This document shows positions 6,998 through 24,618 of a stretch of DNA of 64,000 nt, one piece after another (position 1 is the stretch's first letter; every line of letters begins with the position of its first letter). A model generated the notes under the pieces. It was not told the DNA's origin, made no database searches, and was given only the letters and a program-made list of their open reading frames with translations. The stretch is taken from the sequence record MN988522.1; one strand, given 5' to 3'. Position numbers and translations under genes: made by a program.

Positions 6998-7255
6998 ATG
7001 AGTAAAGCATCTGAAGTTATCAAGAAGCTGAATGAGACTAAACCTTCAGAAGATCTTCTGAAGAGCGAGGTCCAGGAAATTAAGCAGAAGATGATTAATC
7101 AAGGCATCGTCAGACCTGACTATGCTGTTGAAAGATTTAGTCTGGTTAGTGATAGATTCAGAAATGTCTTGATACACGGTATTGTTCATGGAACAAATAC
7201 TGCAGGATGGAGAGATCAGATTAAAGATTTGAGATCTCAGAATTTGATTAGTTAG
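6998..7255 (+). CDS. hypothetical protein with MSKA...LNE N-terminal motif
   Basis: 85 aa ORF; stop codon overlaps G1 of tRNA-Gly. Confidence 0.7.
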   Translation: MSKASEVIKKLNETKPSEDLLKSEVQEIKQKMINQGIVRPDYAVERFSLVSDRFRNVLIHGIVHGTNTAGWRDQIKDLRSQNLIS

Positions 7256-7329
7256 CGGACGTAACTCAGAGGTAGAGTGCAATCCTTCCAAGTTTGAAGT
7301 CGTGGGTTCGATTCCCATCGTCCGCTCCA
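7255..7329 (+). tRNA. tRNA-Gly(UCC)
   Basis: Acceptor GCGGACG/CGTCCGC, loop CT-TCC-AA, U73, CCA. Confidence 0.93.
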
Positions 7330-7330
7330 T

Positions 7331-7407
7331 GCATCCTTAGCTCAGTTGGTTAGAGCATCAGTTTTACATACTGAGGGTCACTAGTTCGAGCCTAGTAGGA
7401 TGTACCA
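7331..7407 (+). tRNA. tRNA-Val(UAC)
   Basis: Acceptor GCATCCT/AGGATGT, loop TT-TAC-AT, CCA. Confidence 0.95.
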
Positions 7408-7426
7408 GTTATATTAAACTATTCGT

Positions 7427-7502
7427 GGGAGATTAGTTCAGTGGTTAGAACCGTCAGCTCATAACTGATTAAACAGAGGTTCGAATCCTCTATCTCCTAC
7501 CA
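7427..7502 (+). tRNA. tRNA(CAU), elongator Met or Ile2
   Basis: Acceptor GGGAGAT/ATCTCCT, loop CT-CAT-AA, CCA. Confidence 0.88.
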
Positions 7503-7505
7503 AGT

Positions 7506-7582
7506 ACCACCTTAACTCAGATGGATAGAGTACTCGACCGATAATCGAGTTGTCATTGGTTCAAGTCCAATAGGTGGTACCA
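7506..7582 (+). tRNA. tRNA-Ile(GAU), C at position 33
   Basis: Stem CTCGA/TCGAG, loop CC-GAT-AA, CCA. Confidence 0.88.
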
Positions 7583-7600
7583 ACTTTTATTGAGTAGATA

Positions 7601-8188
7601 ATGAAGTGCAGTTATTGTGAAACTGAGTTTAGACATCTGAGTCGACATGTTAGATATTGTCCTCAGAATCCTGACAGAATTGTCAAGTTAAATCAGTTCT
7701 CTAAGGCTGAGTCATTAGGCTTACCTAAGCCGCCATTGTCTGAGAAATCTCGGAGAATGACTACTGAAAGAAATGCATCTCGAGTATGGACTCCAGAGAT
7801 CAGATCTAAATTATCTAAGAGTATGATTAAGTACTTTAAAGATAATCCTGAAGCTCATCCGTACTTAAAGTATCATTCAAGTGGTGAATCATATGCTGAA
7901 GGATTCTTTCGAGAATTCTTTTTAAGTCATGATTTATCATTCAAACAAGAGTTGCAGGTTGGTCTCTATACACTTGACTTCGCATTTGAGGACAAGATGA
8001 TTGATGTAGAGATCAACGGTAACTTTCACTATAATAATCCTGGAATTGTTGAGAAAGATCAACGACGAAGACTCTTCTTGGAAGAGCGTGGATGGACTAT
8101 TATAGAAGTTCGATGGTCTGAGTATAAGAAGATGAATGAGTCAGAGCGATCTGATTATCTGAATTCCTTATTATCTCAACTATCCTGA
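7601..8188 (+). CDS. putative homing endonuclease (Zn finger + DUF559/Vsr-like nuclease)
   Basis: CSYC..H..C; LDFAFEDKMIDVEINGNFHY; GWTIIEVRW. Confidence 0.75.
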   Translation: MKCSYCETEFRHLSRHVRYCPQNPDRIVKLNQFSKAESLGLPKPPLSEKSRRMTTERNASRVWTPEIRSKLSKSMIKYFKDNPEAHPYLKYHSSGESYAEGFFREFFLSHDLSFKQELQVGLYTLDFAFEDKMIDVEINGNFHYNNPGIVEKDQRRRLFLEERGWTIIEVRWSEYKKMNESERSDYLNSLLSQLS

Positions 8189-8264
8189 CGCGGGATGGCG
8201 CAGTCGGTAGCGCGCAAGAGTCATAATCTTGAGGTCGAGGATTCGAGTTCCTCTCCCGCAACCA
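8189..8264 (+). tRNA. initiator-like tRNA-Met(CAU)
   Basis: C1:A72 mismatch (CGCGGGA/TCCCGCA), anticodon CAT, CCA; lacks the three G-C anticodon-stem pairs. Confidence 0.85.
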
Positions 8265-8525
8265 GTTTCAGTTAACGAGGCCACCGTATCTAGATTAATC
8301 TACCTCACAGGTATCTAGATCGTAGTGAGTTTGAGCGGAGCAGTCTTAACTGCATCGTTGTGGTCCCATCGATAATGCGGTCCCGAGATGGGATAGGACT
8401 CTATCTGAGTGCACAAGGATAGATGCACCTAAGCGGTCTCTGCGATGAGATCCACCGCTCCATAATCTGTAATCTTGATGTGAACAGTGTCGTAGATATC
8501 TCATCAGTAATATCGAGTTAATGAG

Positions 8526-9026
8526 ATGATGTATATCCGATACGCTTTATACTTACCAGTTAATCTACTACTTGTACTGTCAGCATATGTGTTCTCACCT
8601 ATTCTAGCAGCACTTTCTCTAATTACAGGTCCGACGCTCCCTGGAGTACTTCAATGGTTCTCTACTACGGATGACAATCTAGACGGTGGAATTCATCAGA
8701 ATGTCTCAGGCTATAAGTCTGGACTGAAAGGATTCTCACTATGGTGGCAACGTACATGTTGGATCTGCAGAAATCCTGCTCATGGATGGCAGTCTAACTT
8801 ACTAGGTATGTCTGTTGATGGATTCGAATTTATCGAGAAGATCGATATTTCTACTCCTAAATGGTATCTGATGAAGAATAATAAGCATACGTTCTTCATG
8901 TGGAAGAAGGATCAACCACTCTTCTCCAAGTATTATCTGAAACTATGGTTCGGATGGCTGAATACTGCATATGATGGTAAGAATCATCATTATGAATTTC
9001 AGATCGGACTGAAGAGTAAAAATTAA
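8526..9026 (+). CDS. phage membrane-anchored hypothetical protein
   Basis: N-terminal hydrophobic segment; WFSTTDDNLDG...W..RNPA motif. Confidence 0.7.
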   Translation: MMYIRYALYLPVNLLLVLSAYVFSPILAALSLITGPTLPGVLQWFSTTDDNLDGGIHQNVSGYKSGLKGFSLWWQRTCWICRNPAHGWQSNLLGMSVDGFEFIEKIDISTPKWYLMKNNKHTFFMWKKDQPLFSKYYLKLWFGWLNTAYDGKNHHYEFQIGLKSKN

Positions 9027-9036
9027 TATAGGTTAA

Positions 9037-9114
9037 GTCGCTATGACGGAGTGGTCCAACGTAATGGTCTGCAAAACCATATAACCGCTGGTTCGAATCC
9101 AGCTAGCGACTCCA
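9037..9114 (+). tRNA. tRNA-Cys(GCA)
   Basis: Acceptor GTCGCTA/TAGCGAC, loop CT-GCA-AA, U73, CCA. Confidence 0.93.
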
Positions 9115-9124
9115 AGGTTAAACT

Positions 9125-9235
9125 ATGAAGTATGTAATCATTCTAGCACTTCTTCTAGCAGGATGTCAATCTGCTGAAGAGCGTTACTATTCAGATTTGT
9201 CTACAGGTGTAGGCATGGTTCTAAAGGATAAATAA
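9125..9235 (+). CDS. small putative lipoprotein (36 aa, not in ORF track)
   Basis: MKYVIILALLLAGCQS: signal peptide with lipobox LAGC; upstream AAGGT. Confidence 0.6.
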   Translation: MKYVIILALLLAGCQSAEERYYSDLSTGVGMVLKDK

Positions 9236-9352
9236 ATGTCAACTATTATTGTTGCAGTTGTAGCATTCATTGCAGGTGGATACGCTAGTAAGAATTTTGG
9301 ATTCGATCTAGTTGAGTATGCCAAGGCTGCTTATAACAAGTTTAAGGCATAA
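9236..9352 (+). CDS. small membrane peptide (38 aa, not in ORF track)
   Basis: [18 protein letters not shown]..., abuts previous stop. Confidence 0.5.
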
Positions 9353-9361
9353 TGCCTTTGT

Positions 9362-9438
9362 CGGAGCGTAGCGCAGCCAGGTAGCGCAATAGTTTTGGGT
9401 ACTATGGGTCGTCTGTTCGAATCAGACCGTTCCGACCA
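9362..9438 (+). tRNA. tRNA-Pro(UGG)
   Basis: Acceptor CGGAGCG/CGTTCCG, loop TT-TGG-GT, CCA. Confidence 0.95.
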
Positions 9439-9440
9439 AT

Positions 9441-9517
9441 ATTCCCTTGGACAAGCGGTTTAAGTCATCTCACTTTCACTGAGAAGATCACGGGTTCAAA
9501 TCCCGTAGGGAATACCA
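9441..9517 (+). tRNA. tRNA-Glu(UUC)
   Basis: Acceptor ATTCCCT/AGGGAAT, loop CT-TTC-AC, CCA. Confidence 0.93.
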
Positions 9518-9522
9518 ATTTC

Positions 9523-9550
9523 AGCGAAGTTAGGCTCTTGTAGCCTTCCT
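9523..9550 (+). promoter_or_regulatory. conserved motif copy 3
   Basis: agcgaa gttaggctcttgt agccttcct. Confidence 0.7.
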
Positions 9551-9615
9551 TCTTGTATCGGTTAGTAGTGTCAATCCGAGCTATTAATGTGAGTATTAAG
9601 TATCGGATTCTATGA

Positions 9616-9712
9616 TCGAGAGTGGTGGAACGGTAGACACATCCAGATAAAAGAGCAGTTTCTGGACGCTACTTAAATATGCGTGCTAGTTCAAGTCTAG
9701 CCTCTCGAACCA
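9616..9712 (+). tRNA. Leu-type (class II) tRNA-like gene with aberrant 13-nt anticodon loop
   Basis: Acceptor TCGAGAG/CTCTCGA, A73, CCA, Leu-type D arm, T arm; TCCAGA/TCTGGA stem closes TAAAAGAGCAGTT. Confidence 0.75.
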
Positions 9713-9746
9713 ATATTATATGCTCATTCTTAGATAGGGATTACCA

Positions 9747-10508
9747 ATGGGTAAATTACATGAAATCCTCGCGGTTGAAGGTGACCTCGTAGGTGTAGCC
9801 AAGAAAGTTACTGAAGAAGCTATCGCTACGTTCAGCAAGCGTGCAGATCACTTCAGTGAGACTACTACTGAACAGAAATACTTTGCAGACGATGAGCAGC
9901 ATCTCAATACGTCTGAATCTAAGGCAATGGTGACCACTGTACCTGACAAGCTCAAGTACATCGTTGATCCTATTGCTAAGTTCTTCGATGCGTACTATTC
10001 GAAGGAAGCTACCAATCAGATCGCTAAGGCTGACGTAGAAGTCAAGGGTACAACGATCTTTGCAGATGTTCCAGCAACGGTTCTCCTAGGTATGGAGACT
10101 AAGCTTCGTGAACTCCGTAAGGTCTATGAATCGATTCCGACTCTCGCTCCTGGTGTATTCTGGGAGAAGGATGTTAATCGTCCGGCAGGTGTATACCGTG
10201 CTCGTGAACCTGAAGTCCGATTCGTTACGAAGAAGACTGTACGTCCGATCACTCTTTCACCTGCTACTGACAAGCATCCTGCTCAGATTGAGAAGGTCAA
10301 TGAAGATCTTCCTGTCGCTAAGAAGACGATTACTACCTGGAGTAGTATGATGTCGTCAGCTGACAAGAGCAAGGTCCTCGAACGTATCGATACTCTGATC
10401 CGTGCAGTTAAGACTGCTCGTCAGCGTGCAAACGGTACTGAGGCAGTATCTGCTTCATCCTTCGGTGATAAGATTTTCGACTTTATCCATCAAGGTATCG
10501 TCGACTAA
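9747..10508 (+). CDS. conserved uncharacterised protein (KLxxxLAVE / ATDKHPAQ family)
   Basis: 253 aa; motifs MGKLHEILAVE, VPATVLLGME, ATDKHPAQIE, AVKTARQRAN recalled from an uncharacterised family. Confidence 0.75.
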   Translation: MGKLHEILAVEGDLVGVAKKVTEEAIATFSKRADHFSETTTEQKYFADDEQHLNTSESKAMVTTVPDKLKYIVDPIAKFFDAYYSKEATNQIAKADVEVKGTTIFADVPATVLLGMETKLRELRKVYESIPTLAPGVFWEKDVNRPAGVYRAREPEVRFVTKKTVRPITLSPATDKHPAQIEKVNEDLPVAKKTITTWSSMMSSADKSKVLERIDTLIRAVKTARQRANGTEAVSASSFGDKIFDFIHQGIVD

Positions 10509-10691
10509 GAATTGAATGTTGAGGCTACCAGCATAGCCTCCATTCTCCGACTCCCATAGGGACAAACTCAGCCTTAAACTTATTGTGAGTATCAAGAATT
10601 TATCTTCTGCTCAAGATAAACAAACTAGCTTTGTATCCCTAAAACTTAGACAAGATTTACCAGATCTAGTCGTAGCATATCTCTATTTTCC

Positions 10692-10777
10692 CGGAAGGTC
10701 GTGAGTTCGAGTCTCATCACCGCACCCAATTACCTACAATTGGACTGATGCGGTGTAGCTCAGTGGTAGAGCGTTCG
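10692..10777 (+). ncRNA. circularly permuted tRNA-like domain within a ~420 nt non-coding region
   Basis: T arm GTGAG-TTCGAGT-CTCAT, then CACCGCA-C-CCA...TGCGGTG acceptor-like stem, then D arm TA-GCTC-AGTGGTA-GAGC. Confidence 0.8.
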
Positions 10778-10962
10778 TTTTATCTTGAAGATATCCTATC
10801 GATGATGACTGTATGAATCTATCGTAACGATTAAATATGCTCCGCGATAGGAGTGTATGTTACATTAACAAGAACAGGGTGGTTCCATGCGGAATGTGGT
10901 TCCACCCACCTCTTCTTATATAAGATCATTCGGATTTTATATAATAAGAATTTGAGGTTTAC

Positions 10963-11250
10963 ATGAGTAAGGCATCAAGATTACTTAGCAAGATCAATGA
11001 ATTGGACGGTGGATCTAAGGACCCACTGGTTCAATCAGGTTGTGCTAAGATTGTAGCTTATTGTCAGAAGAAGAGTCTTAGTGCTACTGAGATTGAGCAG
11101 ATTAAGGATCAGATTCTTGACGACGAGCCTCTTCACAATCATACTGCAGATACACTAGCTGCAATCGGTCTTGATATGAATATCAAGTCTGAGCTTGTAG
11201 CGATTGGTCTCAGTAGTGATGAAGCTGATGCGATTATGAATGTAACCTAA
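10963..11250 (+). CDS. hypothetical protein with MSKA...INE N-terminal motif
   Basis: 95 aa, RBS GAGGT. Confidence 0.75.
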   Translation: MSKASRLLSKINELDGGSKDPLVQSGCAKIVAYCQKKSLSATEIEQIKDQILDDEPLHNHTADTLAAIGLDMNIKSELVAIGLSSDEADAIMNVT

Positions 11251-11257
11251 CAGACAT

Positions 11258-11331
11258 GCTCCTATAGTTAAGTGGTATAACTCCTGTTTTGTAATCAGGG
11301 TTCCTCAGTTCGATTCTGGGTGGGAGCACCA
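11258..11331 (+). tRNA. tRNA-Thr(UGU)
   Basis: Acceptor GCTCCTA/TGGGAGC, loop TT-TGT-AA, CCA. Confidence 0.92.
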
Positions 11332-11383
11332 TGATTTCTTGAATCCTAACTCATAGTGAGTTAGAGATAACAAGGAAGATAAA

Positions 11384-11680
11384 ATGAGTGATGAAGTTAA
11401 TAAGACTGTCGTAACTAGAGAAGAACATCGAGGTACTGCTTGTAAGTACTATGATACTCGTGGTAAAGCATACGATGCTATTATCACTGAAGTATGGGGA
11501 CCTCAATGCGTCAACCTTGTCTATGTCAATGATGTAGAAGGTCAGAAAGATTCTTATGGTCAGAAATTGATCAGATCATGTTCTGTGATGCATGGTAGTG
11601 TTCAGCAAGCTCATGGCAACTATTGGATGTTACCAGGAGAGACTCGAGTTTCTAAATATGTTCATGATTCAGCTATTTAA
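11384..11680 (+). CDS. hypothetical protein
   Basis: 98 aa, RBS AAGGA. Confidence 0.7.
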   Translation: MSDEVNKTVVTREEHRGTACKYYDTRGKAYDAIITEVWGPQCVNLVYVNDVEGQKDSYGQKLIRSCSVMHGSVQQAHGNYWMLPGETRVSKYVHDSAI

Positions 11681-11745
11681 TTAACTTCTGTGATCTTCCG
11701 ACCTTGACGCGACGAAGTAGCAGATAACTTATAAACTTTCTTGTT

Positions 11746-12333
11746 ATGTTTTATACTATCTATCGAATAACCAACAATGTTAACAGTAAGATATATGTTG
11801 GTATGCACCAGACTACTAATTTAGATGACGGTTATATGGGATCGAGCAGATTATTGTTCAATGCTATGAAGAAGCACGGTCCTGATAACTTCTCTAAAGA
11901 GATTCTACATGTCTTTGATAATAAAGAAGACATGTTTAGTATGGAAGCACAGATAGTAGACGAACAATTTGTTAAAAGATCTGATACATACAACCTAAAG
12001 ACAGGTGGAGTAGGATCTTTTAGCTACATTAATTCATCTCCTGAATTTCGACAAAGGTCAATTTCAAGAATTCGTGAATTATGTAAGTCTGATACACCGT
12101 ATCGTAGAATTCAATCTAATAAATTGAAAGATGTTCGATACGATTTCACTGGTCATAAGCATACTGAAGAATCGATCTCTAAGATGAAAATATCTAAGGT
12201 CGGTCACGGAGAGGGTTCTTCGAATTCTCAGTATGGGACGATCTGGATTAATAATGGAGTGAAGAACTCTAAACTTAAATCTAATCTACCTATTCCAGAT
12301 GGTTGGAGTAGAGGTAGAAAGATGGGCTTGTAG
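11746..12333 (+). CDS. GIY-YIG homing endonuclease (Seg-like) with NUMOD3
   Basis: TIYRITN..KIYVGMH..DGYMGS; GHKHTEESISKMK; WINNG..GWSRGR. Confidence 0.9.
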   Translation: MFYTIYRITNNVNSKIYVGMHQTTNLDDGYMGSSRLLFNAMKKHGPDNFSKEILHVFDNKEDMFSMEAQIVDEQFVKRSDTYNLKTGGVGSFSYINSSPEFRQRSISRIRELCKSDTPYRRIQSNKLKDVRYDFTGHKHTEESISKMKISKVGHGEGSSNSQYGTIWINNGVKNSKLKSNLPIPDGWSRGRKMGL

Positions 12334-12398
12334 TGATAACGGGAGCACGATGCCTTTGCACGGCATAGGACAGGGTTCGATTCCCTGCTAGTCCACCA
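12324..12398 (+). tRNA. tRNA-Ala(UGC)
   Basis: G3.U70 pair, loop TT-TGC-AC, CCA; first 10 nt overlap the GIY-YIG gene. Confidence 0.92.
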
Positions 12399-12450
12399 CA
12401 TTAGGTCGTATCAACCTGAGGTTAACCGTAGTTACTCAAACTGATACAAT

Positions 12451-12537
12451 GGGATTTCAGACGTGTTGGAGTGCGATCGGCAGACTGTAAATCTGTCCTC
12501 TTAGAGCTACTAGGTTCGAATCCTAGAAGTCCCACCA
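12451..12537 (+). tRNA. tRNA-Tyr(GUA)
   Basis: Stem GCAGA/TCTGT, loop CT-GTA-AA, variable arm, CCA; atypical D arm. Confidence 0.85.
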
Positions 12538-12542
12538 TATTT

Positions 12543-12584
12543 ATAGCCTCATATCGGAGCAATCTGGTATGAGGCTATTTCTTT
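12543..12584 (+). terminator. intrinsic terminator
   Basis: ATAGCCTCATA...TATGAGGCTAT hairpin followed by TTCTTT. Confidence 0.75.
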
Positions 12585-12658
12585 CATGTTAAAGAGAGGG
12601 GCGATGTATTATGATCGTTACGACATCTTCTAGGTAAAACAACCTAGGAGTATAAAGC

Positions 12659-12961
12659 ATGAAGTCGCATTATATTAAGTCTGAGAAGTTTCGTTGGAAT
12701 CGAGACGATAAGATCGAATATATTTACAAGCTCAGAGCTGGTAATTATTACCGTGATCTTAAGACCTTTCAGGAGATCTCTGCGAATGAGTTCGTTAAGT
12801 TTGATCCTGACTGTATCGAGTATAAGATTCCTCCTCGTTATGGACGACTTAATCATTACTTGAACAAGTGGAATCTTGAGAGATTTCCTTCTAAGTCTTA
12901 TAAGAAGTCTTGGAAGTTTGCTCACAGATGCCGTAAGCAATGGATGATCAATCTTGAATAA
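12659..12961 (+). CDS. hypothetical protein
   Basis: 100 aa, RBS AGGAG. Confidence 0.65.
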   Translation: MKSHYIKSEKFRWNRDDKIEYIYKLRAGNYYRDLKTFQEISANEFVKFDPDCIEYKIPPRYGRLNHYLNKWNLERFPSKSYKKSWKFAHRCRKQWMINLE

Positions 12962-13139
12962 GATGACATTCGATGATTGGTGTGATCAGGTCGATACTGT
13001 AGCGAGTAAAGCTATGGGAGGACCTGAATCATACACTAAGGCCACTGGCAGAGAATGCTGGATGGATATGTATAACGATGGATTCACTCCTGAAGATGCA
13101 TGGACTGAAGAGTCTTTATGTATTCAGGAGTCCCTTTAA
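12954..13139 (+). CDS. hypothetical protein
   Basis: 61 aa acidic ORF overlapping previous gene. Confidence 0.6.
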   Translation: MNKMTFDDWCDQVDTVASKAMGGPESYTKATGRECWMDMYNDGFTPEDAWTEESLCIQESL

Positions 13140-13157
13140 TTCTAGATGGATAAGTTA

Positions 13158-13301
13158 ATGAATTTTCTCGGTAAAATCTTTTCTGCAGATTCTAAGAAGC
13201 TGGATGACGCGAAGGCTCTTCTTGCAGAAGTAACTGCATCGAAGAATCGTATCATCAATAATGATCTTAAGGGTCGTATTGAGACTTTCTTGAGTGCATG
13301 A
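13158..13301 (+). CDS. small hypothetical protein (47 aa, not in ORF track)
   Basis: MNFLGKIFSADSKKLDDAKALLAEV...; alternative in-frame ATG at 13146. Confidence 0.5.
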   Translation: MNFLGKIFSADSKKLDDAKALLAEVTASKNRIINNDLKGRIETFLSA

Positions 13302-13340
13302 GATAGAAGGCTAAAAGACGCGAATTATTCGCCTAGATTG

Positions 13341-13368
13341 AGCGAACTTAGCGTCTGATAGCCTTCCT
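13341..13368 (+). promoter_or_regulatory. conserved motif copy 4
   Basis: agcgaa cttagcgtctgat agccttcct, 17 nt before tRNA-Asn. Confidence 0.7.
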
Positions 13369-13385
13369 TCTTTGTCAGACGGTGA

Positions 13386-13461
13386 TGGCTAGTAGCTCAG
13401 TTGGTAGAGCATTGCACTGTTAATGCGACGGTCGTAGGTTCGAGCCCTACCTAGTCAGCCA
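13386..13461 (+). tRNA. tRNA-Asn(GUU)
   Basis: Acceptor TGGCTAG/CTAGTCA, loop CT-GTT-AA, G73, CCA. Confidence 0.95.
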
Positions 13462-13484
13462 GTCTGCTTATAAAGGATTCTTAG

Positions 13485-13691
13485 ATGGAACGTGTATATA
13501 GTTTAGTTTATGTTGCTATCATTACAGCAGGTGTAGTCGCAGGTATCACAGCACTCACTCTACCTTTGTACTATGGTACGATTGATAGTAATCGTAAACA
13601 ATCTGAGTTGTCAAGTAAGTGTGTTGACTCAGGAGGGTCCTGGATCGTAGGTCCTAATGGATACTACCAGTGTATTGCTGGTCGTAAGTAA
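13485..13691 (+). CDS. small membrane protein
   Basis: N-terminal TM helix; C-terminal CVDSGGSW...C. Confidence 0.65.
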   Translation: MERVYSLVYVAIITAGVVAGITALTLPLYYGTIDSNRKQSELSSKCVDSGGSWIVGPNGYYQCIAGRK

Positions 13692-13700
13692 TGTGAATAA

Positions 13701-13792
13701 GGATAGTTGGCTGAGTCTGGTCTAAGGCGCTCGACTTGAAATCGAGAGGACGTGAGAGCGTTCCGTGGGTTCGAATCCTACACTATCCGCCA
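13701..13792 (+). tRNA. tRNA-Ser(UGA)
   Basis: Acceptor GGATAGT/ACTATCC, loop CT-TGA-AA, long variable arm, CCA. Confidence 0.95.
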
Positions 13793-13810
13793 TATTTATT
13801 ATTGAGTATA

Positions 13811-14197
13811 ATGGATCAAATAGTAAAGAAAAAGAGGACTAGACGTCCTGTTTCTTTAGAGACTAGAATGAAATTATCTGCTGCTCTTAAGGGTAAACCT
13901 CAGAGTAAAGTTTCTAATGAAGAGATTTTTGCAGATAATACTACTCATCCTAGACATCGTATTAAAGAAAGAATAATTCGAGATAATCTTATTCCATACG
14001 AGTGTGCAATCTGTGAAAATGATGGTACATGGAATGGTGAACCTTTATCTTTACATCTAGACCATGAAAATGGTAAGAATAATGATAATCGTCTTGAGAA
14101 TCTTAGATTCTTATGTCCTAACTGTCATAGTCAAACAGATACTTATGCAGGTAAGAATAAGAAACGTAAGAGAATCAAGAGAGAAGAGCGTGTTTAG
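13811..14197 (+). CDS. HNH homing endonuclease
   Basis: CAIC..LHLDHENG..NDNRLENLRFLCPNCH; start moved from 13736 (inside tRNA-Ser) to ATG 13811. Confidence 0.9.
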   Translation: MDQIVKKKRTRRPVSLETRMKLSAALKGKPQSKVSNEEIFADNTTHPRHRIKERIIRDNLIPYECAICENDGTWNGEPLSLHLDHENGKNNDNRLENLRFLCPNCHSQTDTYAGKNKKRKRIKREERV

Positions 14198-14261
14198 TTC
14201 AATGGTAGAATGCGAGTCTCCAAAACTTGATATGAGAGTTCGATTCTCTCAGCACGTGCCA
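14188..14261 (+). tRNA. tRNA-Trp(CCA)
   Basis: Loop CT-CCA-AA, G73, CCA; first 10 nt overlap the HNH gene. Confidence 0.9.
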
Positions 14262-14297
14262 ATTCTAGATATTAAATAAACACTTGGATAAGAAGAA

Positions 14298-14942
14298 ATG
14301 TCAAAAGCAAGAGATTTACTTAATACCTTGAATGAAGCTGATGATTGGAATATTCACAAGAAAGAGTTGAAGAAGGCTGGATTTGATCTCCATCCTAATC
14401 ATCACGCTAATGTGAATATCAATCGTAACAACTATCCTCAGAATCGTGATATCTATACGGGTAAAATGAGTAATGGTCATACGATGGTTATTACTCAATT
14501 AACTCCGATTGATATGGATCGATACGCATCTGTTAAGGATGCTTCTGGTAAATTTATCAAGCACTACTATGTAGCTCCTGTTAAACCTACACTGAGTAAA
14601 AGTCCTGTATTAAAGTCTACAGCGATCGGTAATGATCCTAAGACAGTACTTGAAGAAATCAAAGCAGCTATGAGAATGGTTCCAGAAGGACGTCAGGCTA
14701 CCTTTAGATCTGTTGAACAGAATGGTAAGTACTATGAGTTCGATGTCAGATACTGGGGAAGCTGGGAAGTTCCTGATGGTGAAGACGATGATGGAGACTA
14801 CGACTTTGAAGTCTTGACATCTAAATCGTCTAAGTCACTTCAGAACATTGTTGAGCCTATCATTAAGAAATATCCAAGTCTAGATATCTACTATCAAACT
14901 GGAGAGAAGAATTATATTACTGTTCATGCTACTGTAAAGTAG
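14298..14942 (+). CDS. hypothetical protein with MSKA...LNE N-terminal motif
   Basis: 214 aa. Confidence 0.75.
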   Translation: MSKARDLLNTLNEADDWNIHKKELKKAGFDLHPNHHANVNINRNNYPQNRDIYTGKMSNGHTMVITQLTPIDMDRYASVKDASGKFIKHYYVAPVKPTLSKSPVLKSTAIGNDPKTVLEEIKAAMRMVPEGRQATFRSVEQNGKYYEFDVRYWGSWEVPDGEDDDGDYDFEVLTSKSSKSLQNIVEPIIKKYPSLDIYYQTGEKNYITVHATVK

Positions 14943-14952
14943 TTGACAGTAT

Positions 14953-15037
14953 GTCGGTATGGCGGAATTGGTAGACGCCCTGGTTTTAGGTACCAGTGTC
15001 GAAAGACGTGTAGGTTCGAGTCCTATTACCGACACCA
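14953..15037 (+). tRNA. tRNA-Leu(UAG)
   Basis: Acceptor GTCGGTA/TACCGAC, loop TT-TAG-GT, variable arm, A73, CCA. Confidence 0.95.
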
Positions 15038-15043
15038 AATTAT

Positions 15044-15178
15044 GACTTGATGTTGCGAAAGAAATGGTTACTTCGTATTCCAAACGAGAAATGTAGGTAT
15101 CGAATCCTGCTATCCTAATAGGATATCGTCTAAGATAGGACGCTAAAATTTCCATTTCTGACACTATCTCATCAAGTC
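15044..15178 (+). ncRNA. Y RNA-like element Y1 (permuted tRNA module)
   Basis: GACTTGATG-TTGCGA ... ATCT-CATCAAGTC; inner GAAATGG/CCATTTC; T arm, closed acceptor, D arm. Confidence 0.75.
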
Positions 15179-15186
15179 TCATATTC

Positions 15187-15269
15187 AGATCTTGACGTTG
15201 CGACTAGTATCGGATACTTCGCTTTGGTTGCTAAAAACTCCGATGCAATATACTATCTCGTCAAGATCT
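15187..15269 (+). ncRNA. Y RNA-like element Y2 (short, no tRNA module)
   Basis: AGATCTTGACG-TTGCGA ... ATCT-CGTCAAGATCT. Confidence 0.7.
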
Positions 15270-15279
15270 TTCAGTTTAT

Positions 15280-15424
15280 CCTAACGTTGCGAATTAAACA
15301 GTTACTTCGATATCAAGCAGAAGGTCAATGGTTCGAATCCATTCATGCGACACGCGTTGCATGTAGCTCAGTTGGTTAGAGCGTCCGCCACCACAAGATC
15401 TGTTTAAGTCATTATCTCGTTAGG
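15280..15424 (+). ncRNA. Y RNA-like element Y3 (YrlA-like)
   Basis: CCTAACG-TTGCGA ... ATCT-CGTTAGG; TTAAACAG/CTGTTTAA; T arm AATGG-TTCGAAT-CCATT, closed acceptor, D arm GCTC/GAGC. Confidence 0.82.
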
Positions 15425-15433
15425 TCCTTATAA

Positions 15434-15578
15434 CCTAGTGTTGCGATCGGTACAACTTCATCGCATTGTAAGCCCTGTGTCATTGGTTCAAATCCAATTC
15501 CTCCGTCCATCTATCGGAGGATAGCTCAGTCTGGTAGAGCAAGGAAAGTATGTTGTATCAATATACCATCTCACTAGG
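15434..15578 (+). ncRNA. Y RNA-like element Y4 (YrlA-like)
   Basis: CCTAGTG-TTGCGA ... ATCT-CACTAGG; T arm, TCCTCCG-T-CCA...CGGAGGA, D arm. Confidence 0.82.
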
Positions 15579-15716
15579 ATCCTTATCTCATCCACCAACC
15601 TCGGTGTAAGAGTGGAAAGAGTTACGTGATCGTATGAGAATACGATCACAGTCATTTAGGTCATGTACCATGTGTACAAGGATCATTCGAAGGTGCTCGT
15701 CATCTTCAGCAAATAA

Positions 15717-15860
15717 TGTAGAGTTGCGAATATATCAAGTTCATCGCTTACCATATACCAAGCGGGTAGCTCAGTGGTTAGAGCACTAGGATGTAACAGT
15801 CGTAGAGGTCGTCGGTTCGAATCCGACTCTAACTTCTTGATATAGACTTATCTCTCTACA
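15717..15860 (+). ncRNA. Y RNA-like element Y5 (tRNA arms in normal D-then-T order)
   Basis: TGTAGAG-TTGCGA ... ATCT-CTCTACA; TATATCAAG/CTTGATATA; D arm 15767-15784, T arm 15811-15827. Confidence 0.78.
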
Positions 15861-15869
15861 ACTTTTATA

Positions 15870-16004
15870 TGTACTGTTGCGACTAATACGGTTACTTCGT
15901 TGCAAATGAAACATAGGTTCGAATCCTATCCAGAGGATTGTCGTAAGATGACATCTGGCTGAGCATTGGTGAGCTCATCTCCGTATTAACTACATCTCAG
16001 TACA
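15870..16004 (+). ncRNA. Y RNA-like element Y6
   Basis: TGTACTG-TTGCGA ... ATCT-CAGTACA; TAATACGG/CCGTATTA; T arm ATAGG-TTCGAAT-CCTAT. Confidence 0.78.
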
Positions 16005-16014
16005 ATTACAATTC

Positions 16015-16171
16015 GTACCGTTGCGAATGATATGAATACATCGCTGTAGAACCGACGTCGTAAGACATGCTAGTTCAAGTCTAGCTCTCCGTCCCAATAC
16101 TATGACGGAGATGGTGAAATTGGTAGACACATCGGTAGATAAATCTTCATATCGGCTTACAATCTCGGTAT
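16015..16171 (+). ncRNA. Y RNA-like element Y7 (permuted class II/Leu-type module)
   Basis: GTACCG-TTGCGA ... ATCT-CGGTAT; variable-arm hairpin, T arm, TCTCCGT-C-CCA...ACGGAGA, Leu-type D arm. Confidence 0.8.
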
Positions 16172-16180
16172 ATCTTAGAC

Positions 16181-16205
16181 GCTATGTTGCGATAGTCCTC
16201 ATAGC
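16181..16205 (+). promoter_or_regulatory. minimal Y-motif hairpin (Y8) in Ro60 leader
   Basis: GCTATG-TTGCGA-TAGTCCT-CATAGC, 20 nt before the Ro60 ATG. Confidence 0.55.
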
Positions 16206-16225
16206 ATTATCATAGGGAAAATGTC

Positions 16226-17794
16226 ATGGCTTCGATCAATAATAAGTCAGTTGCTAATCTTGCACGTACGGTTGCTCCTAAGGCAGTTGTAGCACCTCGT
16301 ACATTCACTGGTTTATCTCATAACATTCGTAACAATAATGGTGCGATGGCGTATGATATCACTCCTATCGAGCAATTGAGACGTACTGTTCTCTCTTGCA
16401 TGCTCTGGGAGGATTCTGCATATGAGTCTGGTGAACAGATTGCTAATCGTATTGAAAGATTGATCGGAGAGTGTGATCCCTCTGATGTAGCACATCTTGC
16501 TCGTGAAGCAAGACATATCATGAAGCTACGTCATGTTCCTCTCTTTATGTGCATCACGATGCTGAAGTATCCCGAACATAAGAAATATGTTCGTAAGACA
16601 CTCGCATCAGTTATTGAGCGTCCTGATGAGCTTGGTCAAGCTCTCGCTCTCTACTGGAAGGATGCTCTTTCTCCTGCTCGTACTACTGAAGATACTGAAA
16701 TCGGACCTCGAGTTACTTACGTTTCTCAGAGAAAGTCTGATCTGAATCTTCCTCTCCAACTACGTAGAGGTCTTGAAGATGCTCTACAGAAGTTTGACTC
16801 TTATCAGTTGAAGAAGTACCTTATGAAGGACAAGCCTGTCTCTATGGCTGACATTCTTCGTATCGTCCACCCTAAGGGTAAGACTGATGAGATCAAAGCT
16901 ACCTATGGCGAAATCGTCAAGGGTACTGCTACTGCACCTGATACATGGGAGTCTCGTCTCTCATCTTCTGGTAGATCTGAGAAAGCTACAATCTTCACAG
17001 ATATGCTCGAACGTAACAAATTAGGTGCAATGGCTCTACTGAAGAATCTGCGTGGTATGACTGAGGCTGGTGTTGATACCAATCTTATTAATACTGCGAT
17101 TCAGAAGATGAATACTGAACGTGTTCTTCCTTTCAGATTCCTCACAGCTGCTCGTCATGCTCCTCAGTTCAAGTCTAGTCTCGGTGAGGCTATGCTAAAA
17201 TCTCTGAAGGACATTCAGAATCTGCCTGGTCATACAGTACTACTGATTGACATCTCAGGTAGTATGGGTGGACGTATTTCAGGTAAGTCTGATCTGAGAC
17301 GTATTGATGCTGCAGCTGCTATTGCTATCATGTTGAAGGAAATTTGTCAGTCTTCTGATATGTTTGTCTTCAATTATGGTACGTATCAAGTACGTAACGA
17401 TAACGTCTTCTGCGTGAATCAACCTACTGCTAACAATCACGGATACTCCAGGATTGTTGAGAGTACGAGGATCTACAATTACGAAGAAGATGCTGTAGTG
17501 AAGAGAGGATTTGATCTATCAGATCTTATCGTCAATTCAGTAGTTGGTGGAACTGATCTCCAGCAAGCTGTCAGTTACATCAATAATACTGTAGAGTATG
17601 ATCGTATGATTATCTTTACAGATGACGAATCATCTACTGTTCCGCCAGCTCCTAGAGGTCTTTCCTATTCGATCAATGTATCGACTGGAAACTATGGAGT
17701 GACGTACGGTGATTATGTCCACATCAACGGATTCTCTGAAGGTGTGATCGGCTATGTCACTGAGTACGACAAGTACGTGAAGAGTCAGAATTAA
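16226..17794 (+). CDS. rsr: Ro60/TROVE-domain RNA-binding protein (TROVE + VWA)
   Basis: EQLRRTVLSCMLWED, LRHVPL, ERPDEL, LQKFDSYQLKKY, TWESRLS, LGAMALLKNLR, RVLPFRF, VWA LIDISGSM, GGTD. Confidence 0.92.
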   Translation: MASINNKSVANLARTVAPKAVVAPRTFTGLSHNIRNNNGAMAYDITPIEQLRRTVLSCMLWEDSAYESGEQIANRIERLIGECDPSDVAHLAREARHIMKLRHVPLFMCITMLKYPEHKKYVRKTLASVIERPDELGQALALYWKDALSPARTTEDTEIGPRVTYVSQRKSDLNLPLQLRRGLEDALQKFDSYQLKKYLMKDKPVSMADILRIVHPKGKTDEIKATYGEIVKGTATAPDTWESRLSSSGRSEKATIFTDMLERNKLGAMALLKNLRGMTEAGVDTNLINTAIQKMNTERVLPFRFLTAARHAPQFKSSLGEAMLKSLKDIQNLPGHTVLLIDISGSMGGRISGKSDLRRIDAAAAIAIMLKEICQSSDMFVFNYGTYQVRNDNVFCVNQPTANNHGYSRIVESTRIYNYEEDAVVKRGFDLSDLIVNSVVGGTDLQQAVSYINNTVEYDRMIIFTDDESSTVPPAPRGLSYSINVSTGNYGVTYGDYVHINGFSEGVIGYVTEYDKYVKSQN

Positions 17795-17801
17795 GTAGTG
17801 A

Positions 17802-17829
17802 GAATTGGGAGTGAAATACCTCCCAATTC
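17802..17829 (+). terminator. hairpin after Ro60
   Basis: GAATTGGGAG/CTCCCAATTC stem; weak U tail. Confidence 0.5.
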
Positions 17830-17842
17830 CATTTATCTAAAT

Positions 17843-17926
17843 GCCCACTTGATGGAATTGGTAGACATAAGGCACTTAAAATGCCTAGCTTAATGCGTAC
17901 CGGTTCGAGTCCGGTAGTGGGTACCA
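17843..17926 (+). tRNA. tRNA-Leu(UAA)
   Basis: Acceptor GCCCACT/AGTGGGT, loop CT-TAA-AA, A73, CCA. Confidence 0.95.
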
Positions 17927-24616: not shown

Positions 24617-24618
24617 TT

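What the first reader, a model, noticed from the sequence alone, without database searches (positions are those of the whole stretch)
9616..16171. Y-RNA modules share exact blocks with this phage's own tRNAs, in swapped order
Seen: Y7 and the aberrant Leu-like tRNA share TGCTAGTTCAAGTCTAGC (16068-16085 = 9684-9701) and GGTAGACACATC (16122-16133 = 9632-9643). The order is T then D in Y7 and D then T in the tRNA. Y7 also keeps a class II variable-arm hairpin. The T-arm region of Y4 (15478-15498) matches tRNA-Ile (7551-7571) at 20 of 21 nt. Inference: different Y RNAs arose by separate permutation or recombination events from resident tRNA genes, a snapshot of Y RNA birth. T arms are partly conserved in all tRNAs, so some similarity is expected by chance.
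Basis: partly seen in the sequence, partly recalled or inferred. Interest (0 to 1): 0.7.

Follow-up and report, generated by a model that had tools for sequence, protein, structure and literature searches.

The report
Phage Y RNA array mimicking tRNAs
A Rhizobium phage carries seven unannotated Y RNAs in front of its Ro60 gene; their "swapped" T-then-D order is normal for such RNAs, one of them (Y7) really is related to an odd leucine-tRNA-like gene 6 kb away, and the rest do not look like offspring of the phage's own tRNAs.

Summary
The window is Rhizobium phage RHph_TM40 (100% identity). The quoted blocks exist exactly as described.

They lie in a tandem array of seven Y RNAs plus a leader hairpin (15043-16205), directly upstream of a TROVE/Ro60 gene and inside the phage's tRNA cluster. 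T arm, then acceptor, then D arm is the defining order of published YrlA-type Y RNAs ("circularly permuted tRNAs").

- **Y4 versus tRNA-Ile is chance-level.** Its D arm gives no support. Y4 is unchanged in sister phage Y65, where tRNA-Ile is a different allele. Y4 also has a 74%-identical relative in Ro-encoding Vibrio phages.
- **Five of six modules are no closer to resident tRNAs than to 806 unrelated viral tRNAs** (P 0.12-0.96).
- **Y7 and the element at 9616-9712 (tL*) are specifically related.** Both are Leu-type, and their D/T combination is absent from 185,579 genomes. Similarity extends into unconstrained sequence: the 5' leader (8/9), the post-D stretch AGATAAA, and the variable region of the Y65 allele.
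- **Leu-type Y RNAs next to Ro also occur in Caulobacter and Brevundimonas phages.** Y7 is therefore not a fresh birth, and the direction of descent between Y7 and tL* is unresolved.
- **New details:** three modules keep a 7-bp acceptor, a discriminator base and an encoded CCA.

Verdict: observation confirmed, interpretation partly supported.

The parts
9616..9712 (+). tL*: Leu-type tRNA-like gene in normal order. It has a 7-bp acceptor (TCGAGAG/CTCTCGA), A73 and an encoded CCA, a Leu-type D arm, a long variable region and a T arm. In place of an anticodon loop it has a 5-6 bp stem with a 13-nt loop.
   Evidence: Cloverleaf fold. Missed by ARAGORN and by the Rfam tRNA model. 29 of its 40 best matches among 806 background tRNAs are tRNA-Leu, and Y7 is its best match overall. 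It differs by 1 nt in Y65 while the ~100 nt just upstream diverge more (A2 as a whole is 96% identical). Unannotated in all 8 genomes.
9684..9701 (+). T-arm block of tL*, identical to 16068-16085
9632..9643 (+). D-arm block of tL*, identical to 16122-16133
10653..10822 (+). Y0: a permuted tRNA-like RNA with a long closing stem. It has a T arm, the acceptor strand CACCGCA, then C and CCA, a 20-nt spacer, the strand TGCGGTG, and a D arm. It lacks the GTTGCGA motif and lies 5.4 kb upstream of Ro60.
   Evidence: Sub-threshold full-length YrlA hit at 10672-10811, 35.9 bits. About 11 base pairs change in a compensated way between TM40 and Y65, for example ATATCT/AGATAT to TAGTTC/GAACTA, plus three acceptor pairs.
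15043..15180 (+). Y1: Y RNA with a degenerate T arm (8-nt loop), a closed 6-bp acceptor hairpin and a D-like hairpin
   Evidence: GTTGCGA at 15052 and ATCTC at 15166, flanked by complementary stems. Fold z-score -4.4.
15187..15269 (+). Y2: short Y RNA without a tRNA-like module (YrlB-like)
   Evidence: (z-score -4.2)
15280..15424 (+). Y3: YrlA-like, with a T arm, a closed 8-bp acceptor hairpin and a class I D arm
   Evidence: Rfam YrlA, 36.2 bits, full length. A compensated T-stem change in Y65.
15434..15578 (+). Y4: YrlA-like, with a T arm, the acceptor strand TCCTCCG, then T and CCA, a 5-nt spacer, the strand CGGAGGA, and a class I D arm
   Evidence: Rfam YrlA, 37.3 bits. Identical in Y65. 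A 74%-identical relative in Vibrio phage phiKT1024 and its kin.
15717..15860 (+). Y5: Y RNA whose tRNA-like module is not permuted. The order is D arm, anticodon-like stem, T arm, as described for Deinococcus Yrn1.
   Evidence: Rfam tRNA model positions 6-65 at 15765-15829, 33.9 bits. Compensated change CTA/TAG to CCA/TGG in Y65.
15870..16003 (+). Y6: Y RNA with a T arm, an acceptor-like stem carrying an inserted hairpin, and a D-like arm
16015..16171 (+). Y7: Y RNA with a Leu-type permuted tRNA module. It has a variable-arm hairpin, a T arm, the acceptor strand TCTCCGT, then C and CCA, an 8-nt spacer, the strand ACGGAGA, and a Leu-type D arm.
   Evidence: 31 of its 40 best background matches are tRNA-Leu. 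Blocks shared with tL*. 24 differences from the Y65 allele cluster in the module.
16181..16205 (+). Y8: hairpin GCTATG-TTGCGATAGTCCT-CATAGC carrying the Y RNA 5' motif, in the leader 20 nt before the Ro60 start codon
   Evidence: GTTGCGA at 16186. Identical in Y65.
16226..17794 (+). Ro60/Rsr ortholog (522 aa)
   Evidence: Pfam TROVE, 50.3 bits against a cut-off of 23, plus weak Ro60 vWA. Annotated as a TROVE domain-containing protein.
7506..7582 (+). tRNA-Ile(GAT), whose T-arm region matches Y4 at 20 of 21
   Evidence: Replaced by an allele with 56 of 77 identical positions in Y65.

Best explanation
The region is a phage Ro60 (TROVE) ribonucleoprotein locus. Seven Y RNAs in tandem, plus a Ro-motif hairpin in the mRNA leader, sit directly upstream of the Ro60 gene. 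One more permuted tRNA-like RNA (Y0) and one tRNA-shaped relative (tL*) lie a few kb upstream, in the same tRNA cluster.

Shown:
- Each Y RNA closes with a unit-specific helix flanked by the conserved 5' strand GTTGCGA and 3' strand ATCTC. This is the Ro-binding module.
- Most units carry a tRNA-like elbow in the order T arm, acceptor, D arm. That order is the normal YrlA design, a circularly permuted tRNA.
- Y7 and tL* are both leucine-type. They are true relatives, each a circular permutation of the other. The link is either descent through a head-to-tail dimer or short-patch recombination.
- The other modules are generic class I tRNA mimics with no special tie to the phage's own tRNAs.
- The Y RNA types (Y4-like, and Leu-type next to Ro) are older than this phage genus.

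Inferred from published Ro60/Y RNA work:
- The Y stems bind Ro60 and gate or tether it.
- The tRNA-like elbows recruit tRNA-binding host or phage proteins during infection.
- The encoded discriminator base and CCA after a 7-bp acceptor in Y0, Y4 and Y7 mean these RNAs are cut by RNase P and trimmed to a free CCA end.
For: Locus:
- TROVE domain in the adjacent ORF.
- 8 of the 10 plus-strand GTTGCGA sites in the 64-kb window fall within 15052-16186.
- 41 of 42 positions are paired in the six base pairs next to GTTGCGA and ATCTC, with 1-4 pair types per position (five of the six positions vary). The cross-unit control averages 4.2 of 7.
- The same motif, GTTGCGA-N8-GTTACTTCG, occurs in metagenome loci that also encode a Ro relative (L045, L064, L070).
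- Sub-threshold Rfam YrlA hits to Y3, Y4 and Y0.
- Folds give the T, acceptor and D hairpins.
- Compensated changes between TM40 and Y65 in Y0, Y3, Y5 and Y7.

Published architecture:
- YrlA has the order T, acceptor stem, D, and has been called a circularly permuted tRNA. A dimeric-tRNA origin model exists. M. smegmatis YrlA is cut by RNase P and gains CCA (PMC4201824; bioRxiv 10.1101/312249).

Relation of Y7 and tL*:
- T arm identical at 17 of 17, with model probability 3e-5 to 3e-4.
- The D/T combination is absent from 185,579 genomes.
- Each is at or near the top of the other's ranking.
- Y7's spacer plus the next base, ATACTATGA, matches the tL* leader ATTCTATGA at 8 of 9. The null maximum is 6 of 9 in 210 leader pairs.
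- Both share ATC followed by AGATAAA after the D arm.
- The Y65 allele of Y7 shares GACGC...ATATGC with the tL* variable region.

No tie for the other modules:
- P(best of 21 random tRNAs reaches the best resident score) is 0.75, 0.96, 0.80, 0.95 and 0.12 for Y0, Y3, Y4, Y5 and Y6.

Older types:
- Leu-type D arm in the Ro-proximal unit of CcrColossus, CcrPW and Kabachok.
- Y4 relative in Vibrio phages.

CCA:
- Exactly at positions 74-76 in 3 of 6 modules here, each with a 7-of-7 complementary acceptor.
- Also present in two CcrColossus/CcrPW units.
Against: - No expression, Ro60-binding or processing data exist for this phage.
- None of the units reaches Rfam's YrlA gathering score (36-37 bits against 69).
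- One unrelated viral tRNA-Leu matches Y7's two halves as well as tL* does (39 against 37). Much of the Y7/tL* similarity is therefore Leu consensus, and the coarse family-wise P for Y7 is only 0.026.
- The extra similarities (leader, AGATAAA, variable region) were noticed after the fact.
- Only two diverged alleles (TM40-type and Y65) are available, so neither the direction nor the choice between gene conversion and shared descent can be settled.
- The Leu-type units of distant phages may be convergent rather than homologous. MAFFT gives only 65% mean column identity, much of it tRNA consensus.
Confidence: 0.62

Rival explanations
1. Each Y RNA arose separately in this phage lineage, by permutation or recombination of one of its own tRNA genes, so the array is a snapshot of Y RNA birth.
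For: - The modules are heterogeneous: generic class I (Y0, Y3, Y4), Leu-type (Y7) and non-permuted (Y5).
- Y0, Y4 and Y7 keep a 7-bp acceptor, a discriminator base, CCA and a short spacer. That is the junction expected from a head-to-tail tRNA dimer.
- All 20 resident tRNAs also encode CCA.
- Y7's spacer resembles the tL* leader.
- A dimeric-tRNA origin, possibly occurring several times, has been proposed in print (bioRxiv 10.1101/312249).
Against: - Five of six modules are no closer to resident tRNAs than to unrelated viral tRNAs.
- Y4 is unchanged in Y65 although tRNA-Ile there is a different allele. Y4 also has a 74%-identical relative, including non-tRNA scaffold sequence, in Vibrio phages.
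- Leu-type Ro-proximal units and CCA-bearing units occur in Dolichocephalovirinae phages.
- All seven units share one Ro-binding scaffold. This fits duplication of a Y unit better than seven independent captures.
Confidence: 0.13
2. There is no specific relationship. Y7 and tL* look alike only because both conform to the tRNA-Leu consensus, possibly under selection to bind the same elbow-recognising protein. The exact blocks are coincidence or convergence.
For: - The D block is ordinary: 13 of 806 unrelated tRNAs and the phage's own tRNA-Leu(TAA) share blocks of 12 nt or more.
- An unrelated viral tRNA-Leu scores 39 against 37 for tL*.
- Exact T blocks of 18 nt or more occur in 10 of 4836 comparisons between Y modules and unrelated tRNAs.
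- YrlA T and D stems are known to be strongly conserved (bioRxiv 10.1101/312249).
Against: - Y7's particular T arm is rare: 0 of 806 background tRNAs, 0 of 79 Leu T arms carry T-A at stem pair 3, and model P is 3e-5 to 3e-4.
- The D/T combination is absent from 185,579 genomes.
- Similarity continues into sequence that tRNA function does not constrain: the leader at 8 of 9, the post-D stretch AGATAAA, and the variable region of the Y65 allele.
Confidence: 0.17
3. Reverse direction. tL* is an offshoot of the Y7 lineage: a de-permuted copy from two adjacent Y7-type units that later lost the Ro-binding stem. It is not the tRNA parent of Y7.
For: - Leu-type Y RNAs next to Ro exist in distant phages, whereas tL* is found only in the eight Cuauhnahuacvirus genomes.
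- tL* has no usable anticodon loop (13 nt).
- The sequence after its D arm (ATC..AGATAAA) matches the start of Y7's stem.
- Y units are arranged in tandem, which provides the needed dimer.
Against: - Y7's acceptor, discriminator and CCA are more tRNA-like than the closed 4-6 bp stems of the distant Leu-type units. This fits a recent input from a tRNA-shaped gene.
- No intermediate has been seen.
- With two alleles the polarity cannot be read.
Confidence: 0.2

Closest known systems
YrlA-type bacterial and phage Y RNAs (Rfam RF02553; Chen et al. 2014, PMC4201824; Wang et al. 2018, bioRxiv 10.1101/312249)
   Same: - Encoded next to Ro60/Rsr.
- A long 5'/3' stem with a conserved 5' strand.
- A tRNA-like domain in the order (V), T arm, acceptor stem-loop, D arm.
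- Multiple copies per locus, and known in phages.
   Different: - Scores of 36-37 bits against a gathering score of 69.
- Seven units in tandem.
- Three modules have a full 7-bp acceptor, N73 and an encoded CCA, rather than a closed 6-bp stem with a ~3-nt loop.
- One module is Leu-type (class II D arm plus a variable hairpin).
- One unit is not permuted.
Deinococcus radiodurans Yrn1 (as described in PMC4201824)
   Same: Y5 has its T and D arms in the tRNA order, with an anticodon-like stem-loop between them. The published text describes Yrn1 in the same way.
   Different: Y5 sits in the same array, and on the same Ro-binding scaffold, as YrlA-type units. No sequence comparison with Yrn1 was made here.
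Dimeric-tRNA origin model of YrlA (Sim and Wolin 2018, as cited in bioRxiv 10.1101/312249)
   Same: - The T arm comes from an upstream tRNA copy and the D arm from a downstream one.
- Y0, Y4 and Y7 look like such junctions.
- Y7 has a non-permuted relative (tL*) in the same genome, with a matching leader.
   Different: [quoted passage not shown] Here it is formed by true acceptor strands with N73-CCA.
- The events are not recent for most units.
Thermus phage phiLo Ro60 with Yrl1 and Yrl2 (PMC12135203)
   Same: A phage-encoded Ro60 with Y RNA-like genes immediately upstream, and a conserved CGAA-containing motif (here GTTGCGAA in several units).
   Different: Two units there against seven here. 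tRNA-like modules are not described for phiLo. Ro60 identity to this phage is only about 25%.
Circularly permuted tRNA genes of red algae (recalled from the literature; alluded to in bioRxiv 10.1101/312249)
   Same: The 3' half of the tRNA lies upstream of the 5' half, joined across the acceptor end.
   Different: Those genes mature into functional tRNAs with an anticodon loop. Here the anticodon arm is replaced by the Ro-binding stem, and there is no anticodon.

Membership tests
YrlA-type Y RNA | Encoded next to a Ro60/Rsr (TROVE) gene | tested here: met
   The array ends 20 nt before a 522-aa ORF with a TROVE domain (50.3 bits, cut-off 23). Y0 lies 5.4 kb away.
YrlA-type Y RNA | Stem formed by the 5' and 3' ends, with a conserved 5'-strand Ro-binding motif | tested here: met
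   GTTGCGA and ATCTC are flanked by unit-specific complementary stems, with 41 of 42 positions paired and five of six positions varying between units. The same motif occurs in metagenome loci that also encode a Ro relative. Y0 lacks the motif.
YrlA-type Y RNA | tRNA-like domain in the order T arm, acceptor stem-loop, D arm | tested here: met
   Met for Y0, Y1, Y3, Y4, Y6 and Y7. Not met for Y2 (no module) or Y5 (D then T).
YrlA-type Y RNA | Reaches the Rfam RF02553 gathering score | tested here: not met
   Best scores are 37.3, 36.2 and 35.9 bits against 69. Y7 is not hit at all.
YrlA-type Y RNA | Bound by Ro60, and modified by TruB and DusA | not testable with these tools
   Needs immunoprecipitation and modification mapping.
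Canonical tRNA (for 9616-9712) | Cloverleaf with a 7-bp acceptor, D and T arms, and N73-CCA | tested here: met
   The minimum-free-energy fold gives all four arms, and A73 plus CCA are encoded.
Canonical tRNA (for 9616-9712) | Anticodon loop of 7 nt with a readable anticodon | tested here: not met
   A 5-6 bp stem carries a 13-nt loop. Not called by ARAGORN or by the Rfam tRNA model, even at E up to 10.
   P(best of 21 random viral tRNAs reaches the best resident score) is 0.75, 0.96, 0.80, 0.95 and 0.12 for Y0, Y3, Y4, Y5 and Y6. Only Y7 reaches 0.026, and its partner is tL*, not a decoding tRNA.
   Y4 is identical in Y65 while tRNA-Ile there shares 56 of 77 positions. tL* is unchanged while Y7 differs at 24 sites.
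Permuted tRNA gene that matures into a functional tRNA | Anticodon stem-loop present after de-permutation | tested here: not met
   In every permuted unit, the position of the anticodon arm is taken by the Ro-binding stem and the RNA ends.

The most novel reading that the evidence does not exclude
Y7 and tL* capture, within one genome, the two topologies of a single leucine-tRNA-like sequence: tRNA-shaped and Y-shaped. They would be joined through a head-to-tail dimer whose junction (N73-CCA, leader-like spacer, 5' end) is still readable. That would be the first direct sequence evidence for the dimeric-tRNA origin model of Y RNAs. In addition, phage Y RNAs that encode N73-CCA after a 7-bp acceptor would be processed by RNase P into nicked, CCA-ended tRNA mimics. 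These could engage CCA- or elbow-reading enzymes, including aminoacyl-tRNA synthetases (tL* has the A73 of tRNA-Leu).
Probability: 0.25. Interest if true: 0.65.

Novelty: new variant of a known kind. Interest (0 to 1): 0.45.

Why it matters
Ro60/Y RNA particles are conserved from bacteria to humans, but what their tRNA-like domains bind is unknown, and their origin from tRNAs remains a hypothesis.

This locus, unannotated in all eight deposited genomes, offers:
- an unusually rich array of seven units on one scaffold, carrying class I, Leu-type and non-permuted modules;
- modules that still carry a full acceptor stem with discriminator base and CCA;
- a tRNA-shaped relative of one module in the same genome.

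That makes two questions testable in a tractable phage-Rhizobium system. Are such Y RNAs processed like tRNAs? Do Y RNA modules and tRNA-like genes exchange sequence?

It also corrects the tempting reading that the T-then-D order and T-arm matches show recent birth from resident tRNAs.

Tried and rejected
- **Relatives through the Ro60 protein in IMG/VR:** none confirmed.
- **Pattern GTTGCGA-N8-GTTACTTCG in viral and metagenome contigs:** mostly chance hits in coding DNA. Six of 130 loci also encode a Ro relative (three of them, L045, L064 and L070, carry visible Y RNA-like units), and none is a relative of this phage.
It returned tandem tRNA genes and chance hits, and none of the 136 fetched loci has a Ro relative. 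It is therefore uninformative about Leu-type Y RNAs in bacteria.
- **Replicate test in CcrColossus (is its Leu-type Y closest to its own tRNA-Leu?):** abandoned, because its tRNAs are scattered and were not in the 90 kb fetched.
- **Promoter and terminator scan:** counts were no higher than in shuffles. It showed only that no terminator-like site lies between the array and Ro60.
- **Fold z-scores:** significant for Y1, Y2 and Y4 (about -4). They are weak for tL*, Y0, Y3, Y5, Y6 and Y7, as is usual for tRNA-like RNAs.
- **Intragenomic gene conversion from tL* into Y7 in the TM40 lineage:** considered as the sole explanation. It became less clear-cut once the Y65 allele proved closer to tL* in the variable region. 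The distant Leu-type units further suggest the TM40 state is the older one.
- **Bias control:** the background set initially included loci selected for Y7's T arm (L006-L035). These were excluded from the Y7 tests.

Full report
**Identity and context.** The window is 100% identical to Rhizobium phage RHph_TM40 (MN988522.1; Kleczkowskaviridae, Cuauhnahuacvirus; 207 kb). Seven sister genomes are known, six at 99.5% identity or more and RHph_Y65 at about 94%. ARAGORN finds 20 tRNA genes between 4457 and 17926, interspersed with homing endonuclease genes. The ORF at 16226-17794 is a TROVE/Ro60 protein (Pfam TROVE, 50.3 bits against a cut-off of 23, plus weak Ro60 vWA). Neither the 1.2 kb upstream of it nor the element at 9616-9712 carries any annotation in any of the eight genomes.

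**The observation.** All three quoted matches are exact as stated.

**What the elements are.** Eight of the ten plus-strand GTTGCGA sites in the window lie between 15052 and 16186.
- In seven units (Y1-Y7), GTTGCGA is preceded by a short sequence whose reverse complement follows a conserved ATCTC about 80-145 nt downstream.
- In the six base pairs adjoining these motifs, 41 of 42 positions are paired, and five of the six positions vary between units (one to four pair types). Pairing a unit's 5' strand with another unit's 3' strand gives 4.2 of 7 on average.
- The extended motif GTTGCGA-N8-GTTACTTCG recurs in metagenome loci that also encode a Ro relative (L045, L064, L070). [quoted passage not shown]
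- Inside the closing stem, folds give a T-arm hairpin, an acceptor-like hairpin and a D-arm hairpin.
- Rfam's YrlA model hits Y3, Y4 and a further element, Y0 (10672-10811), at 36-37 bits, below its gathering score of 69.
- Y2 has no tRNA-like module.
- Y5 matches the tRNA model at positions 6-65 in the normal order: D arm, anticodon-like stem, T arm.
- An eighth GTTGCGA sits in a hairpin 20 nt before the Ro60 start codon.
- No terminator-like site separates the array from Ro60.

**The swapped order is the known design.** Chen et al. 2014 (PMC4201824) defined YrlA RNAs by a T stem-loop, then an acceptor-like stem-loop, then a D stem-loop, often preceded by a variable-arm-like hairpin.
- They found such RNAs in 254 bacteria and 22 phages.
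- They noted that Deinococcus Yrn1 has the opposite orientation.
- They warned that tandem tRNA genes mimic YrlA in searches.
- Wang et al. 2018 (bioRxiv 10.1101/312249) call YrlA RNAs circularly permuted tRNAs. They cite a model in which these RNAs arose from dimeric tRNA transcripts, perhaps several times.

So "T then D" and "keeps a variable-arm hairpin" are family features, not traces of a local event.

**Are the modules closer to the phage's own tRNAs than to others?** I collected 806 distinct tRNAs, almost all from unrelated viral contigs, with ARAGORN. Loci that had been selected for Y7's T arm were excluded. Each module's 5' half (acceptor strand plus D arm) and 3' half (T arm with flanks) was scored by local alignment.

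The probability that the best of 21 random tRNAs equals or beats the best resident tRNA is:

| Module | P |
|---|---|
| Y0 | 0.75 |
| Y3 | 0.96 |
| Y4 | 0.80 |
| Y5 | 0.95 |
| Y6 | 0.12 |
| Y7 | 0.026 |

The best background matches of Y0, Y3, Y4 and Y5 are spread over Asp, Ile, Met, Lys and His, so these are generic class I mimics. 31 of Y7's 40 best matches are tRNA-Leu.

**Y4 and tRNA-Ile.** This match does not stand up.
- The shared exact block is 14 nt. Blocks of that length or longer occur in 59 of 4836 comparisons between Y modules and unrelated tRNAs. That predicts about 1.5 among the 126 resident comparisons.
- By the 20-of-21 criterion the family-wise chance is about 0.09.
- The D arms do not match (longest common block 6 nt).
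- In Y65, Y4 is identical while tRNA-Ile is a different allele (56 of 77 identical). Ten of the 20 tRNAs are replaced by alleles of 58-81% identity.
- Y4's module, including non-tRNA scaffold sequence (AACTTCATCGCAT..TAAGCC) and a 22-nt D-arm block, has a 74%-identical, unannotated counterpart. It lies in the tRNA clusters of Vibrio phages that also encode a Ro-like protein.

**Y7 and 9616-9712 (tL*).**
- tL* folds as a cloverleaf with a 7-bp acceptor, A73-CCA, a Leu-type D arm, a long variable region and a T arm. It has a 13-nt loop where the anticodon loop should be, and no tRNA finder calls it.
- It differs by one loop base between TM40 and Y65, although the ~100 nt just upstream diverge more (the alignment as a whole is 96% identical).
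- The D block alone is unremarkable. 13 of 806 unrelated tRNAs, and the phage's own tRNA-Leu(TAA), share exact blocks of 12 nt or more with Y7.
- One unrelated viral tRNA-Leu matches Y7's two halves slightly better than tL* does (39 against 37). Much of the likeness is therefore Leu consensus.

The rest is not consensus.
- The 17-nt T arm is identical. None of 806 tRNAs shares more than 15 nt, and none of 79 Leu T arms has T-A at the third stem pair. A position model gives 3e-5 to 3e-4.
- The D/T combination at tRNA spacing is absent from 185,579 species genomes.
- Y7 is tL*'s best match among all tRNAs and modules tested (37, against 34 for the best background tRNA and 22 for the best resident tRNA).
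- The similarity runs into unconstrained sequence. ATC followed by AGATAAA comes after the D arm.
- Y7's 8-nt spacer plus the next base (ATACTATGA) matches tL*'s 5' leader (ATTCTATGA) at 8 of 9. The maximum among 210 pairs of resident leaders is 6 of 9.
- The Y65 allele of Y7 shares GACGC...ATATGC with tL*'s variable region.

I conclude that the two are true relatives, each a circular permutation of the other.

**Direction and age.** Differences between TM40 and Y65 in the array are strongly clustered. Y1, Y2, Y4 and Y6 have 0-2 each, Y3's module has 17, Y5's anticodon-like stem has 8, and Y7 has 24.
- By my reading of the alignments, TM40's base equals tL*'s at 10 of the 11 differing positions in Y7's T and D arms.
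- In the variable region, the Y65 allele is the closer one.
- In Y65, the D arm of Y7 is no longer Leu-type.
- The pattern is mosaic. It fits either short-patch exchange or divergence of two alleles from an ancestor that resembled tL* throughout.

An independent clue on age comes from other phages.
- The Y RNA unit nearest to Ro60 in Caulobacter phages CcrColossus and CcrPW, and in Brevundimonas phage Kabachok, also has a Leu-type D arm (TGGCGGAATTGGTAGACGCA or TGGCGGAAGTGGTAGACGCA). In CcrColossus and Kabachok the T loop is TTCAAG-type; in CcrPW it is TTCGAGC. Kabachok's unit also has a variable hairpin.
- Their Ro60 proteins are 37-39% identical to this one.
- Brevundimonas phage Gurke and Xanthomonas phage 10KY502B lack such a unit.

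A Leu-type Y RNA next to Ro is therefore not peculiar to this phage. Whether tL* fathered Y7's present module, or descends from the Y7 lineage, cannot be decided with two alleles.

**Encoded CCA.** In Y0, Y4 and Y7, the T arm is followed by a 7-nt strand, one base, and CCA. A spacer of 20, 5 or 8 nt comes next. Then comes a perfectly complementary 7-nt strand, followed by T and a purine and then the D stem, which is exact tRNA numbering.
- By my estimate from the window's base composition (roughly 0.012 per module), CCA falling at that exact position in 3 of 6 modules has a chance of about 3.5e-5. This figure was not computed with a tool.
- CCA is retained in Y0 although its spacer and stems diverged heavily from Y65, with about 11 compensated pair changes.
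- It recurs in two units of CcrColossus and CcrPW.
- Published YrlA from Salmonella has a closed 6-bp stem and no CCA. M. smegmatis YrlA, with a 7-bp stem, is cut by RNase P and receives CCA (PMC4201824).
- I infer that these phage units are processed to a free CCA end. This is not shown.

**Function.** This part is inferred from the literature, not tested here. The stems bind Ro60, gating or tethering it. The tRNA-like elbows recruit tRNA-binding proteins. For another phage, a Ro60-Y RNA-PNPase complex has been reconstituted (PMC12135203). Several module types on one scaffold suggest several partners, or mimicry of several tRNA classes, during infection.

**Verdict.**
- Observation: confirmed.
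- Interpretation: partly supported. It holds for the Y7/tL* kinship and for module heterogeneity. It does not hold for Y4/tRNA-Ile, for the meaning of the swapped order, or for recent birth from resident tRNAs.
- Classification: a new variant of a known kind, namely a YrlA-type Y RNA array with unusual, tRNA-complete modules.

Noticed in passing
window 16181-16225: A hairpin carrying the Y RNA motif (GCTATG-TTGCGATAGTCCT-CATAGC) lies in the Ro60 mRNA leader, just upstream of the ribosome-binding site. It is identical in Y65. It could be a Ro60 autoregulatory site or a truncated eighth Y unit.
   Followed up: partly
window 10653-10822: Y0 is a permuted tRNA-like RNA with acceptor, C and CCA, and a long closing stem. 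It lacks GTTGCGA and lies 5.4 kb from Ro60. About 11 base pairs change in a compensated way between TM40 and Y65, so it is under strong structural selection while its sequence evolves fast.
   Followed up: partly
window 4457-17926, versus L002 (RHph_Y65): Ten of the 20 tRNA genes (both Met, Ile, Pro, Glu, Ala, Asn, Ser-TGA, Trp, Leu-TAA) are replaced by alleles of only 58-81% identity in a phage that is otherwise about 94% identical. The other ten are 97% identical or more. Homing endonuclease genes sit between the tRNAs and differ in presence between genomes.
   Followed up: partly
window 15586-15712: The spacer between Y4 and Y5 has no Y motif. It holds a perfect 10-bp hairpin (GTGATCGTAT-GAGA-ATACGATCAC) and two further hairpins. 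Function unknown.
   Followed up: no
window 8264-8525: About 260 nt between tRNA-Met and the next ORF have no ORF of note and no Rfam match. This may be another structured RNA.
   Followed up: no
window 9543-9554 and 13361-13372: The 12-mer GCCTTCCTTCTT occurs only twice in the window. One copy follows a small hairpin just after tRNA-Glu (before tL*), and the other lies just before tRNA-Asn. It may be a terminator or processing signal of the tRNA cluster.
   Followed up: partly
window 9747-10508: The ORF between tL* and Y0 is a full-length DUF7873 protein (E 1.7e-77). The ORF at 8526-9026 is DUF7338. Both are of unknown function and sit among the RNA genes.
   Followed up: no
window 4457-4546: tRNA-Ser with anticodon ACT (A at the wobble position), which is unusual for bacterial-type tRNAs. 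It is conserved at 90 of 90 positions in Y65.
   Followed up: no
L036 (CcrColossus) 23457-24839 minus strand; L422 2816-2883; L423 2781-2855: Short 'tRNA' features annotated just upstream of Ro60 in other phages (tRNA-Gln 68 nt, tRNA-Thr 68 nt, tRNA-Ser 75 nt) fall inside Y RNA arrays. These arrays use the motif GGTGGCGTAG...TACTTCG at the 5' side and TTGTTCCCC at the 3' side. The features are probably miscalled tRNA-like modules of Y RNAs.
   Followed up: partly
L429 (Vibrio phage phiKT1024) about 1480-1600: An unannotated Y4-like element with T, acceptor and D order lies inside the tRNA cluster, about 20 kb from that phage's Ro-like gene.
   Followed up: partly
L426 (CcrColossus 134-175 kb): The same phage that carries the Ro60/Y RNA array also encodes an RtcB-like ligase, an RNA ligase and a nucleotidyltransferase. 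This recalls the bacterial rsr-yrlBA-rtcBA linkage.
   Followed up: no
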